Source: Octopus sinensis
Lineage: Eukaryota
Direction of reading: 5' to 3'
DNA: 27,552 nucleotides
Assembly: GCF_006345805.1 (NCBI RefSeq)
Contig: NW_021833342.1
Span: 1-27,552, forward strand
Shown: piece by piece, positions 1 to 22,715 of the stretch
Numbering within the stretch: the stretch's first letter is position 1
How the letters are laid out: every line of letters starts with the position of its first letter
Notes under the pieces: model-generated
The model's input: the letters and a program-made list of their open reading frames with translations, nothing else
Database searches by the model: none
What the model was told of the DNA's origin: nothing
Program-made: the position numbers and the translations under genes

Positions 1-156
1 ATTGCGGAAACAACGTTCAAACAATTAAAAGACAGACACCCAAACGCCATCCGGCATATCGCGAACTTGCCGGACTATCTGAAGAAAGAGGAGAAAGAAG
101 GGGCCCACAAACGTGTGGTGAGGTCGGCCCCCACCTCTCCAACGAAATGTAAGTAG
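1..156 (+). CDS. C-terminal end of LINE ORF1 (partial)
   Basis: Frame 1 is open from base 1 to TAG at 154-156 (IAETTFKQLKDRHPNAIRHIANLPDYLKKEEKEGAHKRVVRSAPTSPTKCK*), just upstream of the ORF2 ATG at 174. Identity is inferred from position only. Confidence 0.55.
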   Translation: MAETTFKQLKDRHPNAIRHIANLPDYLKKEEKEGAHKRVVRSAPTSPTKCK

Positions 157-173
157 AACTTTTACTTTTTGTA

Positions 174-3100
174 ATGGCTTCGCTTAACCTTGGTTGTTTA
201 AATGTGCGTGGCCTGAGTTCGAAGTGGAAGCAGGCTTGTTTCCTCGACGACCTCAGATCACATGATATACATGTGATGGTTGCTACAGAGACCAAGCTGG
301 ACAGCCTACAAACCTTCTCGCCTCTCCTGAATGGCTACGAGAAAATCATGTCTCCTGGCCAGACCGGAGGCGAGGGGGCGTAGTGGTACTGATCCGTAAA
401 GACTTGGCTCTACAGACAAGTACAGTCTATGTAGACCCAGAAGGTGGGCTGGTCGTCCTTGATGTGACATACAGCAGTAAGGCCTTCAGATTAATCGGAC
501 TCTATGCACCTTGTGCTAGAGGTTTCCAAACTGATTTTTATCGGCGCCTAGAGGGCTTTCTCGTGACGTCGAAGACTTTAGTGATATTAGGGGACTTTAA
601 TGCTATCGTTGACGTACACATCGATAGCGTTGGCTCGATCTATAGGAAAGTGAACTCACGTCTCGTGGATCTGCTTAAGCGGTTTCAGCTGGCAGATCGT
701 TACAGACTTGACCATCCGAACGTCCCAGAGTGGACCTGGATGAGTGGCGACGGAAGGTTCAAGTCTTATCTAGACAGGATAGTGATAAGAACTAGAGATA
801 AGTCTAGTTTTAGTTGTCCACAGCTCGTCCAGGTGCCCTATACTGACCATAGAATGGTCACGTGTAGACTGGACATAGATAGCACACTTAAGATAGGAAC
901 CGGCTACTGGAAGCTGAACAAGTCTACTTTGACACGTGAGGCATACCGTAGTCGGATTAAGGTGTTAGTGCAGAGGGTGTTAACCGGAGCCGTGGTTAAT
1001 AACCGGTGGTGGTTCACCCTCAAAAGAGCCATTCTATTCGAGTCCATTAGATTTAGTAAACAACTAAGACTAGATAGGGCTAGAATAGAAGGGCAACTAG
1101 TTAAGAACTTAGAGGAGGCGTTGAGGTTGGGCTCTGCATCTCACATTTTAGCGGCAAGAACGGCATTAGACCGTCACCTCAAACCAAACATGAGGGATGT
1201 AGAGTCCGGGCTAAAGTACGAGCATTGGCCGTGAGGGAATTAATGTTGCCGGATGGGCCCGTACGATAGAAACACAGCGTGGAAACGATGCCACAATTGG
1301 GTCTCTTGTTGATGAAAACGGATGCACGATCAAGAAGCGGGACGAGATGTGTGAGGCACTTCACAAGCACTTCGCCGAGTTGTTCGGGAGGTGCGGGACG
1401 CTGGATCATGGTGCGGCCCTTAGGGACTTCTTCCTGTCTGGTGCCCCGCCTCTCGACACGAGAGGCTGAGTGCTGTGAAGGGCCAATCACAGCCGAGGAA
1501 GTAATCGAGGTGTTGGGCAAGTGCCCCGGGAGAAGTCGCCGGGTCTCGATGGTCTGCCCTTTGAATTTTATAGAAGTATGCCAGACTTGTTCGGGCACCT
1601 GCTGGCTAGCGTCTACGCCAATTGCAGCAAATGGGAGAATTCCCAAGTCTGCGAGCCGGGGACGGTGACGTTGATCAGGAAGGACCCGAACAAGGGGACG
1701 AGATAGGGAACTTCAGGCCCATAACTCTGTTAACACAGAGTTAAAGATTCTGGCCAAGGTGCTAGCAAAAACGTTGGCGCGGGTCGTGGACAAACTTGTC
1801 GGGGAAGCGCAAACGTGCGCTATCCCCGGCAGAACGATCCACGACAATCTCCACCTTATACGCTACTCCTTAGAGAGGGTGGGGAAGCTTTCTGGCGCAG
1901 GGGGAGCACTGGTACATTTAGACCAGTCCAAAGCATTTGATAGGTCGACCATCGGTACCTGGCGGCGGTCCTCGGAGAGGCTGGCCTAGGCCCGACCTTT
2001 CGAGGTTGGATCGCTGCTTTGTATAGCGACATCGAGTCTGTAGTCAAGGTGAACGGTTCCTTTTCGAAGCCGTTCAGGATCGAGCGTTCAGTTCGTCAAG
2101 GTGTCCCCTGTCCTCGCTCCTATACGTATTGGCTCTTGAGCCTTTGCTGCAGAAGTTGGAGGCACTAGGGGGCGCGCCGCATGATCTATGGTGTGGAGAG
2201 AGAGCTACGGCGTATGCGGATGACACCTCCATCATCGTGGCAGACGAAGGCCAGCTTCCAGTGGTGGAAGAGGCCATCAAAAGCTACGAGGCGGTGGCAG
2301 GAGCAAAGGTTAACAAGGACAAGTCGGTCGGTTTGCAACTCGGCACCTGGAGGGGCAAGTCGATGCCGTCCATAACGTCGTAGGGCGTTGGACGCAAGGT
2401 CCTGTTAAGCTGCTCGGAGTCTGGTTCGGGCCAGACCTCCAGATTGAGAAAAATGGAGTGAGGTGGCCAACAAGGTGACCGCTCTAACCCAGACCTGGTC
2501 TGGGCGGGCGTTATCCCTGCTAGGGAAGGCGGAGGTGGTGCAGATGTTTATAGCATCAGTAATCACCTACCGTCTGACCGTGGTGCCTTGCCCCGATTTG
2601 TGGCTGAACAAGTTGGAGAGAATCCTTTTCCGATTTTTGTGGAAAGAGGAAAGCCACTTGTAAAGCGCTCTGTCTGCTGCCAGAAACCGCTAAAGGGTGG
2701 GCTAGGGATGCCTTGGCTGAGGATGCGAAAACTCGCGTTAAGGTTGAGGCACCTCTGGCTTTACCTGGATGGAGAGCAGGTGTGGTCACCGCACGTCCGG
2801 TTCTACCTTCCCCAGTTAACATCCCTAACGGACATCGGTGCATGGATCAAGCGGAGACCTAAACTGAGTGAATGGCATTATCTCGGGTGGGCAACGCCGG
2901 CAACAGGAGTTCCACCACGGATTTCTATAGCGGGTTAGTGGAGATTAAGTCCGAAGACACCTTGGGGGAGACCCTGGGCTACGATGAAAATCAGTTGGTC
3001 AACCTGTTCCGGAGGACGTTCGGGCCGGGGTATCTGGATAATTACCAGAAATCCCTGGCTTGACAGTGTTTCCGTGCGGCTTTACCTGTTCGCGACAAGC

Positions 3101-3532
3101 TGTCAAGGCACAGTAGTGCCGTCTCGCCGACATGCCCGCGATGGGAGCAGGATAGGGAGACCGTCTTGCACGCATTCGTGGAGTGTCCGGAGTTATCAGG
3201 ACTGATAGCTTTTGTTGAACAACTGTTGTCAGTGATGGGAAGAGTACAGCTATCAGCTGAGTCTATCATCGAGATTGTGCCGCCCCCTTTCCTTAACAGG
3301 GAAAGAAAGGCTTGTTTTTTCTGTGTAGTAGCCATACTGAAAGAAACAGTATGGAAGACGCGTACGAAAGTATAGTGACAGGCACCTTTGTCTCCGGCCA
3401 GGGGTTGATTAACTTTTTTAGTTACCCCTCAGTAGCAAAATCAGGCTGGAGAAGAGGTGTCTGTCACGAGATATGTTTGTGAAAAGATGGAAGCCTGTGG
3501 CATACAAGATGGGTATGTTAGGCACCAGGTAA
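174..3532 (+). pseudogene. LINE ORF2 (APE endonuclease + reverse transcriptase + zinc knuckle), frameshifted and with stops
   Basis: APE motifs: CLNVRGL, ATETK, LGDFN, YLDRI, YTDH, then YWKLN. RT motifs across frames: KSPGLDGLPFEFY, FRPITLLN, LDQSKAFDR, RQG-CP, YADD (2213-2224). Knuckle CPRWEQDRETVLHAFVEC (3133-3186) with the second Cys mutated to Trp. Frameshifts near 380, 1180 and further downstream; W-to-TGA stop at 3061-3063. The end coordinate is approximate. Confidence 0.92.
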
Positions 3533-3760
3533 GTGTGACCGGATCAGAAAGTAAAGATTCTACCCGGATGGCTGGGTGTCCGTCCTTCGACATGATCATT
3601 AATATTTTTAAACATTGCCTTCGTAAAATTCATTGTTTATAATCTTATCCGTAATTTCATTCGAAAATTGTAACTTTGTTAAGCTACTTCACCCTTTATA
3701 TTTGTCTGTCCTTGTTTGTCCCCTCTTTGTAAATGCCTAAATGGCAAATTATATGAAATA

Positions 3761-3900
3761 AAGTAGCTTGCTAACCAGCCACATGGTTCCGGGTTCGGTC
3801 CTACTGCGTGGCATCTTGGGCAAGTGTCTTCTGCTATAGCCCCGAGCTGACCAATGCCTTGAGAGTGGATTTGGTAGACGGAAACTGAAAGAATCCTGTC

Positions 3901-3937
<37 letters not shown>

Positions 3938-4140
3938 CATGTGTTTGTGTGTCTGTCCCCCTAGCATTGCTTGATAACCGATGCTGGTGTGTTTACGTCC
4001 ACGTCACTTAGCGGTTCAGCAAAAAAGACCGATAGAATAAGTACTGGGCTTACAAAGAATAAGTCCCGGGGTCGATTTGCTCGGCTAAAGGCGGTGCTCC
4101 TGCATGGCCGCAGTCAAATGACTGAAACAAGTAAAAGAGT
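3761..4140 (+). mobile_element. tRNA-derived CORE-type SINE, 5' head cut by the LINE
   Basis: B-box-like GGTTCGGTCC (3792-3801), CORE-like CTTGGGCAAGT (3815-3825), internal (TA)n (3902-3933) and a second half ending GACTGAAACAAGTAAAAGAG. It starts mid-head with no A-box. Family recognised from memory of octopus SINEs. Confidence 0.8.
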
Positions 4141-7099: not shown

Positions 7100-7980
7100 G
7101 CTGGAGCACTAGAGGTAGTCACAATTGCACCTTACCTGTTTGCACTTGTATTAGATTATGGAATTCGGCAGGTTGTGTGCAACAGTGAGAAACACCTTGG
7201 TTTCATCATAAACTGGCAAACACCGCAGAGAATAGCAACAGTAAGAATCACAGACCTAGACTTGTAGATGATATAACACTCATATCTAATGAAACAGATC
7301 AAGCATAACAGCTGCTCAGAAGAGAAGGGACACAACTGCTAACTTGGACAGTTCAAAAATGTCAAAAAAATGGAATGCATGTCTTTCAACGAATCGTGTG
7401 ATGCTGAATTGAATTTGTGTTATGCGGTTCCAAAATGGATGTTGTTGAAGACTTCAAATACTTGAGTAGTTTGGTGAGCAGTTCGGAAGAAGACATGATG
7501 ATCAGGAAGGCACAAGCATGGACTGCCTGTCTCAAACTAAAGGTCTGCAACTCCAAATTGTCCAGGCAAATCAAAACGAAACTGTTCATTGCAACTGTTA
7601 TATCAGTGCTATTATCATATGACAGTGAAACATGGACGCTGACAAAGAAATTATCAAACGGGCTAAATGGATGCTACTCAAGGATACTGCGAATGGCCTT
7701 AAAGTGAAATGACAGCAATATATGACAAGTGAATGCATTTATGGAGAGCAGCCAAAAGTTAGCGAGAATATCAGGCAAAGACGGTAGCGAGTATCTGGTG
7801 AAAGAGGGCGCCACCTGAACTTGGAGGTATCAAAATTAATCTTGTGGAACCCTCTTCATGATGATGTAAGCAGAAGCGTACTTCGTTACGCTTACTTCGA
7901 TAACTTGGTCGCAGACCTTTTCTTGGAATGTATCTAGGACCGAGAAACCGTGATGATGGACCAAGAATGTTGGTGCGCCC
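7100..7980 (+). mobile_element. RTE-type LINE, 3' RT fragment (decayed)
   Basis: Remnant motifs IAPYLFALVLDY, ITDLD-VDDI (degenerate FADD, ~7247-7278), VEDFKYLSS, RKAQAWTAC, SETWTLTKKL...GCYSRILRMAL and a C-terminal KLILWNP...MMDQECW. 5'-truncated. Confidence 0.85.
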
Positions 7981-11029: not shown

Positions 11030-11272
11030 TGTCGATGTTGTCGACCCATTATTTGAAAGGGATTTTGTTTTGTCGTCTGAAGATATGAAAGGCAAAGTCG
11101 GCTTCGCTGAATTCGAACTCAGATTGGCAGAAGCTGAAACATAAAGCAGAACATTTAATTTCTGATGTAAACACAAGCAAGAAATTTGTGAACGAAATGA
11201 TTATTGTACCCCCATTAATGCCAGCACATGACGTATACTTTAGTTTATTGGACCCGGAGGAATTACAGGTAA
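11030..11272 (-). mobile_element. Two decayed SINE fragments (same family as the 12073 array)
   Basis: ATGAAAGGCAAAGTCGGCTTCGCTGAATTCGAACTCAG (~11085-11122) is the diverged reverse complement of the array's B-box plus central domain. A second, weaker match lies at ~11195-11272. Confidence 0.65.
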
Positions 11273-12045: not shown

Positions 12046-13035
12046 AAGGGACGGCAGTATCACTAAAGTGTCGTAAAGCGGCGAGCTGGCAGAAACGTTA
12101 GCACACCGGGCGAAATGCTTAGGGGTAATCCGTCTACTGTTACGTTCTGAGTTCAAATTCCGCCGAGGTCGACTTTGCCTTTCATCCTTTCGGAGTCGAT
12201 AAATTAAGTACCAGTTACGCACTGGGGTCGATGTAATCGACTTAATCCCTTTGTCTGTCGTTGTTTGTCCCCTCTGTGTTTAGCCCCTTGTGGGTAGGGA
12301 AAAAATGGGTATTCCGTCTGCCGTTACGTTCTGAGTTCAAATTCCGCCGTGGTCGAATTAGCCTTTCATACTTTCGGGGTCGATAAATTAAGTACCAGTT
12401 ACGCACTGGGGTCGATATAAACGACTTAATCCGTTTGACTGTCCTTGTCTGTCCGCTCTGTGTTTAGCCCCTTGTGGGTAGTAAAGGATTAGGTATTCCG
12501 TCTGCCGTTACGTTCTGAGTTCAAATCCCGGCGAGGTCAACTTTGCCTTTCATCCTTTCGGGGTCGATTAAATAAGTACCAGTCACGTACTGGGATCGAT
12601 GTAATCAACTCAATCCCTTTGTCTGTCCTTGTTTGTTCCCTCTATGTTTAGCCCCTTGTGGGCAATAAAGCAATAAGAAACGTTAGTATGCCGGGCGCAA
12701 TGCTTTACGGTATTTCGTCAATCATTACATTCTGACTTCAAATTCCACCGAGGTTAATTTTGTCTTTCATCCTTCCGTGGTCGATAAATTAAGTACCAGT
12801 TACGTACTGGGGTCAATCTAATCGACTGACACCTTCCCCAAAAATTTCGGGACTTGTGCCTACAGAAAAAAAACGAGTATCGCTAAAGTGTCAGACAAAA
12901 TACCTTGATGTACTTGTTTTGATGCATTAGTTTCTGAGTTCAATTTCCGTAGGTGTCTGCTTCGATTTTGATTTTTCATAGGTTCATAAAATACCGTGCC
13001 GCTCTGGTAATGAGAACGAAGGGATCGACTAACCT
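12046..13035 (+). mobile_element. Older SINE split by the array (12046-12072 and 12876-~13035)
   Basis: 17-bp duplication AGTATC(A/G)CTAAAGTGTC at 12056-12072 and 12876-12892. The right part continues into a decayed B-box (CTGAGTTCAATTTCC). Confidence 0.65.
12073..12875 (+). mobile_element. Nested/tandem array of four tRNA-derived SINE units
   Basis: Unit 1 has a full head (A-box TGGCAGAAACG 12087-12097, B-box GAGTTCAAATTCC 12149-12161). Units 2 and 3 start at GGTATTCCG (12308, 12492; 184-bp period). Unit 4 starts at AGAAACG (12676) and has a different tail. The central GAGGTCGACTTTGCCTTTCATCCTTTCGGGGTCGATAAATTAAGTACC block resembles the MetaSINE domain as I recall it. Confidence 0.9.
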
Positions 13036-13374
13036 TTCATTTGTAATTGCTCTCTTTGTATAAAAAAACAAAATCATGATTTGATGGAACATAGCGTTCG
13101 CCGGTTTTATTCTTTCGCCATTTTCTGTATCGTACGTACATCACCAACAAATATATGAACGACATTAGAAAAGAAATGAGTTCACATTATCATGTCACTT
13201 CCATTGAACTTTCACTAACAAAACATTTGATAAACATTAATGAATAATTAAGTAACGATTGTTTAACTTTGATAAATCTTATTTACCCAGCTTAATTCAA
13301 AGATTATCATGGTTTTGGTGGGCGTTCCAAATTTTCATTGTTTAAAAGGACACATAAACATATACATCACACAC

Positions 13375-21471: not shown

Positions 21472-22544
21472 CTATTTTTCTTTTTCCCAATCTCTAACAC
21501 TGTATGAGTACATAATTGTATTTATAACGAAAGCCTAACTTTGAAGGAATATTTCATTTTCTTTATTGTTACATATAAAAATTCCATAAAGACTGGAAGC
21601 CATTACTGTAGAAATTTTGTCGCAAATATTTCCTTTATATTTTCTGTCACTACAACGAATATATTTTAATCTTCGAAACGTTTATAACAGACACAAACAT
21701 TCATAAAGCCACATTCATACGACTTATATACGGCTATACGTATTGAAATGTCTGAGTGTGTATACATATCATACACGTAGTTATGAAAATATGCACGCTT
21801 ACATTTGTACACATATATATACTTGACTGTATATTCATATACGTGTGTGTGTATTCGTTTGGTACGTATGTGTCTTTGTTTGTGTGTTTTTGCCCGCGTG
21901 TATGAGTGCGTGTCTGTGTGCGTGTGTGCATGTGTGTGTATTAGTTAATTATTAATAACTACTCTTACTGCATTCTTGCAATCTTTCTTTTATACTGATT
22001 ATCGCCAGACTACACTATACACGGTTAAAGACGATCCATGAATCCGTGTATTTTTCTTAAATCCAATGTATTATTTATCAAACAATATTTCCATCTGCTC
22101 ATTTGCAGAACTTGATGCACGAGAGCTTCTAAACAAGAGTTATAATCGTCAAAGTAGACTCAGAGAGAAAGAGACATCGATACTCATCTGCACACCGAAT
22201 AATCGTCCCGTTATGATTATTCATGCAACTGTTATAAAATGCATATAAGGATCGCATTTATGTGACATCATTACAGAATATTGAAGCGTGTGTAACAAAT
22301 ATAACTGAAGGATACCAAGATGAAGTAAATGTTTTCTTCTTTCTTCAGCAAACTGCAATTTGTACAAAGTTATAGCACTATTCAGACCACTTAGAACCCT
22401 TTAGAAACAGGCAACGGTGTGAATTTAATGCAGTTACCAGTAAAGAGACGAAATCACAAAGGTAAAATAAAATAAAATGTGAGTGTGTGTGCATGGGTGC
22501 GATGAAACATATTAGCAATGTATGTGGAGTGTGAGGTGTCATGG

Positions 22545-22715
22545 TGGCAGTATCGTTAGCACGACAGGTAAATGCTTAGAGACATATTCGTGCGCCTTAC
22601 ATCCTGCATTTTAATTGCCTGAGGTCAACATTAACTTTCCTTATTTCGAGCTCCATCAAATAACTACGAGGCGAGAATTGGGGTCAATCTAATCGACCTA
22701 TCTCATCCTCCAGTA
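22545..22715 (+). mobile_element. Old tRNA-SINE (same family as the 12073 array)
   Basis: TGGCAGTATCGTTAGCACG head, GAGGTCAAC and GGGGTCAATCTAATCGAC blocks, heavily diverged. Confidence 0.7.

What the first reader, a model, noticed from the sequence alone, without database searches (positions are those of the whole stretch)
12073..12875. SINE array looks like repeated self-targeted nesting, with tail variant tied to insertion point
Seen: each LINE-like tail is followed directly by SINE-head sequence. The tails of units 1 and 2 (GGGTAG...) resume at GGTATTCCG (12308, 12492); the tail of unit 3 (GGGCAATAAAG..., closest to the LINE) resumes inside the A-box at AGAAACG (12676). Unit 4 has a different tail and looks most diverged; unit 1 looks least diverged. 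Inference: a host SINE (head 12073-12090 plus 12676-12875) was hit in its head by a Tx1-tailed SINE, which was then hit twice more, with seamless homologous 5' joins. With the LINE's own insertion into a SINE head, this suggests a Tx1-driven system that grows SINE arrays by targeting its own passengers.
Basis: partly seen in the sequence, partly recalled or inferred. Interest (0 to 1): 0.8.

Follow-up and report, generated by a model that had tools for sequence, protein, structure and literature searches.

The report
Head-to-tail SINE array in octopus
Four copies of an octopus short retroelement sit head to tail inside an older copy, joined by the copying enzyme of a partner element rather than by plain DNA duplication; this is a variant of known SINE arrays, and one locus cannot show that the elements aim at their own heads.

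Summary
Window 12073-12875 contains one full-length SINE (u1) and two units of exactly 184 bp that start at GGTATT (u2, u3). A fourth unit (u4) starts at AGAAACG and has a different tail plus an A8 run.

- A 17-bp target-site duplication (12056-12072 / 12876-12892) brackets the whole array, and there are no inner duplications.
- The array lies in the head of an older related SINE (u5). The nick site there is homologous to the u3|u4 junction (GGC^AG).
- Every inner tail ends at the natural end of the LINE-type tail core.

CpG decay suggests u4 is older than u1-u3 (p=0.016), which points to at least two stages. Reverse transcription most likely made the junctions (about 0.75), not plain DNA duplication.

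I slightly favour repeated target-primed insertion into resident heads with homology-assisted 5' joins (0.35). Template jumping, copying of a composite master, and unequal exchange remain open.

The age gradient among u1-u3 is not significant. The link between tail variant and insertion point rests on three units. Tx1 clade membership is untested. No further octopus DNA was reachable, so the genome-wide test could not be run. In Argonauta, 7 of 12 related tails are followed by DNA not recognised as a repeat.

The parts
12048..12055 (+). Leader of the older SINE u5 (GGGACGGC), just upstream of the nick site.
   Evidence: Aligns with the leaders of u1 and of the copy at 22520-22710..GGC^AG(A/T)A(A/T)C.
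12056..12072 (+). Left copy of the 17-bp target-site duplication, AGTATCACTAAAGTGTC. It is part of the head of u5.
   Evidence: Matches 12876-12892 at 16 of 17 positions. The one mismatch is a CpG transition.
12073..12090 (+). 5' leader of SINE-A (GTAAAGCGGCGAGCTGGC). Under the nesting model it belongs to the host element whose remainder is u4.
   Evidence: Leader plus 12676-12873 aligns as one full-length SINE. A similar leader is seen at L001 16264.
12091..12307 (+). Remainder of u1: tRNA-like head from AGAAACG, a CORE-like body and tail A, ending ..CCCTTGTGGGTAGGGAAAAAATG.
12308..12491 (+). u2: 184-bp unit starting at GGTATT, with a complete tail-A core and no terminal repeat.
12492..12675 (+). 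u3: 184-bp unit starting at GGTATT. Its first 35 nt are identical to u2. Tail is ..GGGCAATAAAGCAATA.
12676..12875 (+). u4: SINE-A starting at AGAAACG (tRNA-like +1), with tail B, an A8 run at 12866-12873 and an unassigned CG. It carries more CpG decay than the other units (reading it as older assumes the decay happened at this locus).
   Evidence: 6 of 11 CpG sites kept, against 30 of 33 in u1-u3 (p=0.016). B box changed G to C. The only T4 run is at 12758.
12876..12892 (+). Right copy of the target-site duplication, AGTATCGCTAAAGTGTC.
12893..13069 (+). Remainder of the older, diverged SINE u5 (B-box-like TTCTGAGTTCAATTTCC), ending in an A-rich run.
   Evidence: About 63% identity to u1 and u3. 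The empty-site join aligns as one SINE.
1..3763 (+). Decayed LINE of the L1 superfamily. It carries APE and RT domains with frameshifts, and its 5' end lies beyond the window. Its 3' tail is related to SINE tail A.
   Evidence: PF03372 and PF00078. 83% identity to O. bimaculoides LOC106873154. The relative P0002 is nearest to L1 ORF2p, E=7e-43. Tail match.
3764..4140 (+). Second SINE family (SINE-B), lacking about 22-27 nt of its head and abutting the LINE tail. This is another tail-to-head junction.
   Evidence: Alignment with three L001 copies, two of which carry fuller heads.

Best explanation
The array was built by the partner LINE's machinery (endonuclease plus reverse transcriptase), not by DNA duplication, and in at least two stages.

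Stage 1, shown: a tail-B SINE-A copy (leader 12073-12090 plus u4) inserted by target-primed reverse transcription into the head of an older SINE (u5). The nick was at GGC^AGTATC and it left a 17-bp duplication.

Stage 2, inferred: tail-A SINE RNAs were reverse-transcribed from nicks in resident heads. The first nick was at the homologous GGC^AGAAAC of the host. The next two were at AGC^GGTATT.

These nick sites look like each other (GC^RGTAT / GC^AGAAA). They also look like the element's own terminal motif: the tail core ..AAAGAAATC is normally followed by ATTATT or TATTT. The RNA 3' end could therefore pair with the nicked strand, so each junction shows a complete tail core and no terminal repeat.

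The target is a homologous SINE. The top-strand end can therefore prime second-strand synthesis by annealing to the matching part of the cDNA. That gives a seamless 5' join with a hidden target-site duplication.

Reverse-transcription origin of the junctions in general: about 0.75. This specific nesting route: 0.35.
For: 1. One 17-bp duplication brackets the array and there is none inside it.
2. The outer nick in u5 and the u3|u4 junction fall at the same aligned head position. A template jump on RNA would not predict this.
3. The site contexts resemble each other: gacggc^AGTATC, ctggc^AGAAAC, ttagc^GGTATT.
4. Tails of the LINEs (window, JGI contig L015, Argonauta L014) and of the SINEs align. 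All three inner tails stop at the end of the core. The following GGTATT or AGTATC falls in the column of the canonical TATT (A3).
5. u4 shows more CpG decay (p=0.016) and has a damaged B box. The outer duplication also has one decayed CpG. This fits a host that was already in place.
6. u2 and u3 are identical for 35 nt starting exactly at the junction, yet differ at 17% of sites beyond (p=0.0026; for the first 17 nt alone, p=0.066). That is what a hidden duplication of host DNA would give.
7. The last 18 nt of u1's tail differ from u2 at 6 sites and from u3 at 7 (p=0.004 and 0.001). This is unlike DNA-level copies.
8. Five tail-to-head junctions in the same orientation occur in one 27.5-kb window, where SINE heads of one orientation are about 1% of the sequence.
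Against: - Only one locus was examined. No dispersed tail-A copy from octopus could be fetched, so neither a subfamily consensus nor a junction census exists.
- Private changes over whole units (9, 11, 14) show no gradient.
- u1, which should carry the youngest hidden duplication, differs from u2 at 3 of its first 17 nt. Rescuing the model needs mismatch correction or a different order of events.
- All three units are exactly 184 bp with no indels. DNA-level amplification predicts this most simply.
- In Argonauta, 7 of 12 tails are followed by DNA not recognised as a repeat.
- The window was picked because it looked odd, so the chance estimates are biased.
- The microhomologies are short and AT-rich.
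Confidence: 0.35

Rival explanations
1. Template jumping. In one insertion event into the host's head, or in one event for the whole array, the reverse transcriptase reached a defined 5' end or stop in a SINE RNA. The candidates are AGAAAC, the tRNA-like +1, and GGTATT, the first base of the 3' arm of a 13-bp hairpin. It then continued on the 3' tail of another SINE RNA, up to three times. The result is a concatemer with a single target-site duplication.
For: - The architecture matches chimeric retrocopies. There is a single duplication. The 5'-most part is full length. The downstream parts are 5'-truncated. An A run occurs only at the 3' end.
- Double template jumps are documented for LINE reverse transcription (PMC2104539). 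Template switching is the accepted route of SINE module exchange (PMC4758252, PMC4494074).
- The truncated units start at the loop/stem border of the predicted hairpin.
- Total private changes of u1-u3 are about equal at 9, 11 and 14.
Against: - u4 shows more CpG decay than u1-u3 (p=0.016), so at least u4 seems not to be of the same age.
- It does not predict that the outer DNA nick in u5 falls at the position homologous to the u3|u4 junction.
- It does not predict the 35-nt identity tract of u2 and u3 that starts at the junction (p=0.0026).
- The hairpin fold is not better than shuffled sequence (z=-1.2).
Confidence: 0.22
2. One junction made by reverse transcription, then DNA-level amplification. 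A tail|GGTATT junction arose once, by nesting or by a template jump. Unequal crossing-over, slippage or gene conversion between the two units then added the third 184-bp unit.
For: - All three unit segments are exactly 184 bp, the junction position is the same, and there are no indels.
- Tandem-like SINE arrays of the form TSD-(SINE)n-TSD, with a complete first head and 5'-truncated inner units, are described in the clam S. broughtonii. There they are attributed to unequal recombination (PMC11481361). SINE-derived satellites are also known (PMC10702118).
- u2 resembles u3 in its first 35 nt and is nearer to u1 afterwards (12 against 24 differences in positions 36-174).
Against: - A crossover predicts that u2's 3' part, including the tail, is a sister of u1's. 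Yet they differ at 18 of 149 sites and at 6 of the last 18.
- With that amount of time elapsed, about 4 differences are expected in the first 35 nt of u2 against u3. None are seen (p about 0.015).
- Unlike the clam arrays, the tails here are not truncated.
Confidence: 0.17
3. Retrocopy of a composite master. The four-unit structure formed elsewhere. It was transcribed as one RNA from u1's promoter and inserted here once, using u4's tail.
For: - A single 17-bp duplication, a full-length 5' head and a terminal A8 run are what one retrotransposed composite would show.
- No T4 terminator occurs before 12758, inside u4.
- The decay of u4 could predate the insertion, because u4's promoter is not needed in a composite.
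Against: - No second copy of the composite is seen in the 48 kb of octopus DNA available.
- Internal tail cores would offer competing start sites for the reverse transcriptase.
- This moves the question of how the junctions arose to another locus and does not answer it.
Confidence: 0.13
4. Pure tandem duplication of DNA, with no role for reverse transcription in the inner junctions.
For: TRF period 184, 2.9 copies, no indels.
Against: - The duplication border would have to coincide with the natural 3' end of the tail core, at a chance of roughly 2-3%. That end is defined independently by LINE and SINE tails from three genomes.
- u4 has a different tail and start point, which homologous exchange cannot create.
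- The two units that should be youngest are not each other's closest relatives.
Confidence: 0.05

Closest known systems
Tandem-like SINE arrays of the form TSD1-(SINE)n-TSD1 in bivalves (Scapharca broughtonii), and similar arrays in potato (PMC11481361)
   Same: One target-site duplication surrounds several same-family SINE units. The first unit has a complete tRNA-related head. The inner units are truncated at one head position. The host is a mollusc.
   Different: In the clam the units are also truncated in the 3' tail and are highly similar, and unequal recombination is invoked. Here every inner tail runs to the end of the LINE-type core. The units differ by 11-14%. The last unit belongs to another tail subfamily and shows more CpG decay, suggesting it is older.
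Chimeric retrocopies made by LINE reverse-transcriptase template jumps: U6/L1 chimeras and the tripartite chimeras of Magnaporthe (PMC2104539, PMC4476161)
   Same: Parts are fused directly in one orientation. The downstream parts are 5'-truncated. There is one duplication and a single 3' A run.
   Different: Here the parts are copies of the same SINE family, and two junctions fall at the same nucleotide. One part shows more CpG decay than the rest. The outer DNA target lies at the same head position as an inner junction.
Tx1-clade LINEs and their SINEs that share a target: Tx1-Mar and SINEU in Mariner-N4_AMi, and Keno in U2 genes (PMC4494074)
   Same: A LINE and the SINEs that carry its tail insert into one repeated sequence, and copies pile up next to earlier copies.
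   Different: Here the proposed target would be the head of the passengers themselves. Clade membership and target preference (Kojima's criterion of more than 20% of flanks) were not established. In Argonauta, most tails of the related family are followed by DNA not recognised as a repeat.
Octopus tRNA-derived CORE-SINEs OR1/OR2 (Ohshima and Okada 1994, cited in PMC4824008 and PMC4758252)
   Same: It is a tRNA-like head (I read the anticodon-arm remnant as Arg-like) followed by a MIR/CORE-like body in an octopus genome.
   Different: Identity with OR1/OR2 is recalled from memory. It was not tested because no reference sequence was available.

Membership tests
tRNA-derived SINE paired with a LINE through a shared 3' tail | tRNA-related head with A and B boxes | tested here: inconclusive
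   ARAGORN and Rfam find no tRNA. A B-box-like GAGTTCAAATTCC and a D-arm/anticodon-arm remnant are visible by eye.
tRNA-derived SINE paired with a LINE through a shared 3' tail | 3' tail homologous to the 3' end of a LINE in the same genome | tested here: met
   u1 positions 178-207 match the window LINE at 3701-3730, 93%. The terminal core aligns with LINE tails of L015 and L014.
tRNA-derived SINE paired with a LINE through a shared 3' tail | Dispersed copies flanked by target-site duplications | tested here: met
   Other copies lie at window 22545-22700 and 11031-11123 (minus strand), and at L001 9375-9553 and 15835-15910. A 17-bp duplication surrounds the array. Argonauta relatives carry duplications of 10-20 bp.
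Tx1 clade of target-specific LINEs | APE endonuclease plus an L1-superfamily reverse transcriptase | tested here: met
   PF03372 and PF00078. PF13966 in relatives. Nearest solved structure is human L1 ORF2p, E=7e-43, against R2 at 1e-22.
Tx1 clade of target-specific LINEs | Phylogenetic placement inside Tx1 rather than L1 proper | not testable with these tools
   No Tx1 reference sequences or RTclass tool were available.
Tx1 clade of target-specific LINEs | One kind of sequence in more than 20% of flanks (criterion in PMC4494074) | tested here: inconclusive
   In octopus, one LINE 3' end abuts a SINE-B head and three of about five independent SINE-A events lie in SINE heads. In Argonauta, 7 of 12 tails are followed by DNA not recognised as a repeat. 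The numbers are far too small.
Template-jump chimeric retrocopy | Single target-site duplication, same orientation, 5'-truncated downstream parts, A run only at the 3' end | tested here: met
Template-jump chimeric retrocopy | All parts inserted at once, so all have equal age since insertion | tested here: not met
   u4 has lost 5 of 11 CpG sites, against 3 of 33 in u1-u3 (p=0.016). This holds only if u4's decay happened at this locus. Among u1-u3 the ages are not distinguishable.
DNA-level tandem SINE array, TSD1-(SINE)n-TSD1 | One duplication, a complete first head, and inner units truncated at one head position | tested here: met
DNA-level tandem SINE array, TSD1-(SINE)n-TSD1 | Units also truncated in the tail, and units that are each other's closest relatives | tested here: not met
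   The tails reach the end of the core. The mosaic pattern of differences fits no single duplication order. Comparison with dispersed copies was not possible.

The most novel reading that the evidence does not exclude
An L1/Tx1-superfamily LINE of octopods, and the SINEs that carry its tail, home to two or three defined positions in the tRNA-like heads of resident SINEs. Those heads include the heads of the LINE's own passengers. Homing would work because the sites pair with the element's terminal motif or fit its endonuclease. Homologous second-strand priming would hide the target-site duplication. SINE arrays would then grow by self-targeting, which would be a target class not described for LINEs.
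Probability: 0.3. Interest if true: 0.7.

Novelty: new variant of a known kind. Interest (0 to 1): 0.45.

Why it matters
If head-targeting holds genome-wide, it gives a simple and testable route from dispersed SINEs to tandem arrays and satellites. It would also be a case of a LINE using its own passengers as safe landing sites, with invisible target-site duplications that standard annotation misreads as tandem repeats. If it does not hold, the locus is one more composite retrocopy. It would then be useful mainly as a warning. A census of 'the base after the tail' can be inflated by amplified composite elements.

Tried and rejected
- I translated the SINE in the frame that reads from the tail through the head, and searched the protein collection to harvest SINE-derived ORFs from octopus assemblies. 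No candidate was found.
- Exact-pattern scans of metagenome, prokaryote-genome and viral contigs for SINE body and tail motifs gave nothing or only chance hits. None of L002-L012 matches the SINE. L016-L018 were not examined.
- A search for LINE relatives in viral contigs gave nothing.
- Among the LINE homologues returned, only one was octopus (P0001, giving L001, which is gappy). One was Argonauta (L014) and one came from a JGI metagenome (L015). The ENA hits are another organism: L013 has no octopus SINEs.
- Searching papers for the SINE sequence as a text string gave nothing.
- Rfam and ARAGORN do not recognise the heads.
- Pfam finds nothing in eight other window ORFs.
- The hairpin at the GGTATT site is not significant against shuffled sequence.
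- I rejected 'tail variant decides insertion point', because n=3 and the variants differ by two transitions.
- I rejected a re-used target with repeated duplications, as seen in Argonauta, because no inner duplications exist here.

Full report
**What is there**

The window is octopus DNA. The LINE fragment at its start is 83% identical in protein to an O. bimaculoides gene model, and both abundant octopus SINE families are present.

- u1 (12073-12307) is a full-length SINE.
- u2 (12308-12491) and u3 (12492-12675) both begin at GGTATTCCG.
- u4 (12676-12873) begins at AGAAACG and ends with a different tail and an A8 run.

TRF reports period 184, 2.9 copies, 87% matches and no indels. The u1 segment from its own GGTA to its tail end, u2 and u3 are each exactly 184 bp.

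A 17-bp direct repeat brackets the whole array. AGTATCACTAAAGTGTC lies at 12056-12072 and AGTATCGCTAAAGTGTC at 12876-12892. The chance expectation is about 3e-5. There are no duplications between the units.

Joining the two flanks gives an older, diverged SINE of the same broad family, u5. In that alignment the duplication starts right after GGC, at GGGACGGC^AGTATC. This is the position homologous to GAGCTGGC^AGAAAC of SINE-A.

So the DNA nick that primed the outer insertion lies at the same head position at which the tail of u3 meets u4. A real insertion into a SINE head, in the same orientation, is therefore shown for at least one event.

**The tails**

The LINE in the window (1 to about 3763) has APE and RT domains with frameshifts. 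Its Argonauta relative P0002 (56% identical) is closest to human L1 ORF2p among solved structures. This places it in the L1 superfamily. Whether it is Tx1 could not be tested.

I aligned the 3' ends of this LINE, a related LINE on a JGI metagenome contig (L015), and an Argonauta hians relative (L014). I added the SINE tails from the window, L001 and L014.

All share a core, ..CCCTTGTGG(C/G)NAATAAAGAAATC. In ordinary copies this is followed by (ATT)n, TATTT or an A run.

The three inner tails of the array stop at the end of that core and have no terminal repeat. The GGTATT or AGTATC that follows falls in the column of the canonical TATT.

The unit border therefore coincides with the natural 3' end of the retroelement. 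A random DNA duplication would reach this only about 2-3% of the time.

The last 18 nt of u1's tail also differ from u2 at 6 sites and from u3 at 7, against about 10% divergence elsewhere (p=0.004 and 0.001). I conclude that reverse transcription made the junctions (about 0.75).

**Order of events**

u4 keeps only 6 of 11 CpG sites. u1, u2 and u3 keep 10, 11 and 9 (Fisher p=0.016). u4's B box has lost its conserved G, and the only mismatch in the outer duplication is a CpG transition.

A tail-B copy in L001 keeps those CpGs, so the losses are decay and not subfamily markers. The host, leader 12073-12090 plus u4, was therefore most likely in place before the tail-A units arrived.

Among u1-u3 the picture is mixed.
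- Private changes over whole units are 9, 11 and 14 (p=0.57).
- In unit positions 36-174 they are 2, 10 and 14 (p=0.013).
- u2 and u3 are identical over the first 35 nt after their junctions and differ at 17% of sites beyond (p=0.0026).
- u1 differs from both at positions 5, 13 and 15.

An identity tract that starts exactly at the junction is what a hidden target-site duplication of host DNA would give. But it sits on the pair that the simple 'newest at the 5' end' order makes the older one. No simple model explains all of this.

**Mechanism**

I favour nesting (0.35). The LINE endonuclease nicks resident heads at GC^RG(T/A)A sites. The RNA's terminal motif pairs with the nicked strand, so the cDNA starts at the end of the core. 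The top-strand end, being homologous SINE sequence, then anneals to the cDNA and gives a seamless 5' join.

The rivals are:
- **Template jumping within one insertion (0.22).** The architecture is that of chimeric retrocopies (PMC2104539). The truncated units start at the loop border of a predicted 13-bp hairpin, although the fold is not significant.
- **One retro-made junction amplified by unequal exchange (0.17).** This resembles the TSD1-(SINE)n-TSD1 arrays of S. broughtonii (PMC11481361).
- **A retrocopy of a composite master (0.13).** There is no T4 terminator before 12758.
- **Pure tandem duplication (0.05).**

**Wider evidence**

Five tail-to-head junctions in the same orientation occur in this one window. 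They are LINE|SINE-B at 3764, u1|u2, u2|u3, u3|u4 and u4|u5. The window was, however, selected for looking unusual.

In 22 kb of Argonauta DNA, the related family has 12 tails.
- 7 are followed by DNA I did not recognise as a repeat.
- 2 sit in TSD-SINE-TSD arrays. One target there was used twice by different SINEs.
- 1 lies 27 nt upstream of a further full-length SINE that has its own duplication.
- 1 ends the array with the twice-used target and is followed by the last copy of that duplication.
- 1 is a truncated tail fused to an internal head position.

Clustering is therefore common in this family. Strict head specificity is not a family trait.

**Limits**

No further octopus DNA could be reached. 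There is therefore no subfamily consensus, no census of junctions and no orthologous locus. The claims about 'tail variant tied to insertion point' and 'Tx1-driven' remain untested.

**Verdict**

The structure is a new variant of known SINE arrays and chimeric retrocopies, of moderate interest. A genome-wide census would decide among the models.

Noticed in passing
L014 1430-2110 (minus strand), Argonauta hians: A roughly 16-20-bp target sequence (ATTTYCATTACARAGNCTAA) occurs three times. The copies separate a tRNA-Phe-like SINE from a block of three fused SINE pieces that has no inner duplication. The same target therefore seems to have been used twice by different elements. One inner junction is a truncated tail (GGCTAGT) fused to an internal head position.
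   Followed up: partly
L014 14820-15310 (plus strand): Two full-length SINEs with the same tail core lie in tandem. Each is followed by AG(G/A)(C/T)CAGCAC, so this is a dimer of the known TSD-(SINE-TSD)n type. The two units are only about 80% alike (estimated by eye).
   Followed up: partly
window 3764-4140: A second octopus SINE family (SINE-B) lacks about 22-27 nt of its head and directly abuts the LINE's 3' end. Its own 3' end (..CAAGTAAAAGAGT) loosely resembles the LINE tail core. The missing head piece would lie beyond the window's start if the LINE inserted into it.
   Followed up: partly
window 12107-12136, and the SINE-A consensus: The head can fold as RNA into a 13-bp hairpin, CGGGCGAAAUGCU / GGUAUUUCGUCUG, with loop UAGC. 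The truncated units start at the first base of the 3' arm. The whole-head fold is not better than shuffled sequence (z=-1.2).
   Followed up: partly
L015 (JGI metagenome 3300045642, Ga0486131_03187) and protein P0081: A metagenome contig carries the 3' half of a cephalopod-type LINE ending in a long (ATT)n. A protein labelled 'MAG: Herbaspirillum sp.' is 55% identical to this LINE. Animal DNA has probably been binned into microbial data.
   Followed up: no
L001 16264-16320: This is a SINE-A fragment with only the head. It ends at GATATTTC, 8 nt past the GGTATT site, and is preceded by TTATTATTAAG. Unrelated sequence follows, and no right-hand part lies within 4.4 kb. The locus has several assembly gaps.
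   Followed up: no
window 12874-12875: A CG dinucleotide between u4's A8 run and the right copy of the duplication could not be assigned to the tail, to the target or to untemplated addition.
   Followed up: no
window 7417-7707: An ORF resembles, by eye, the C-terminal part of a reverse transcriptase from another LINE. Pfam gives no hit. The rest of the window is rich in (TA)n, (CA)n, (CTAT)n and trinucleotide runs.
   Followed up: partly
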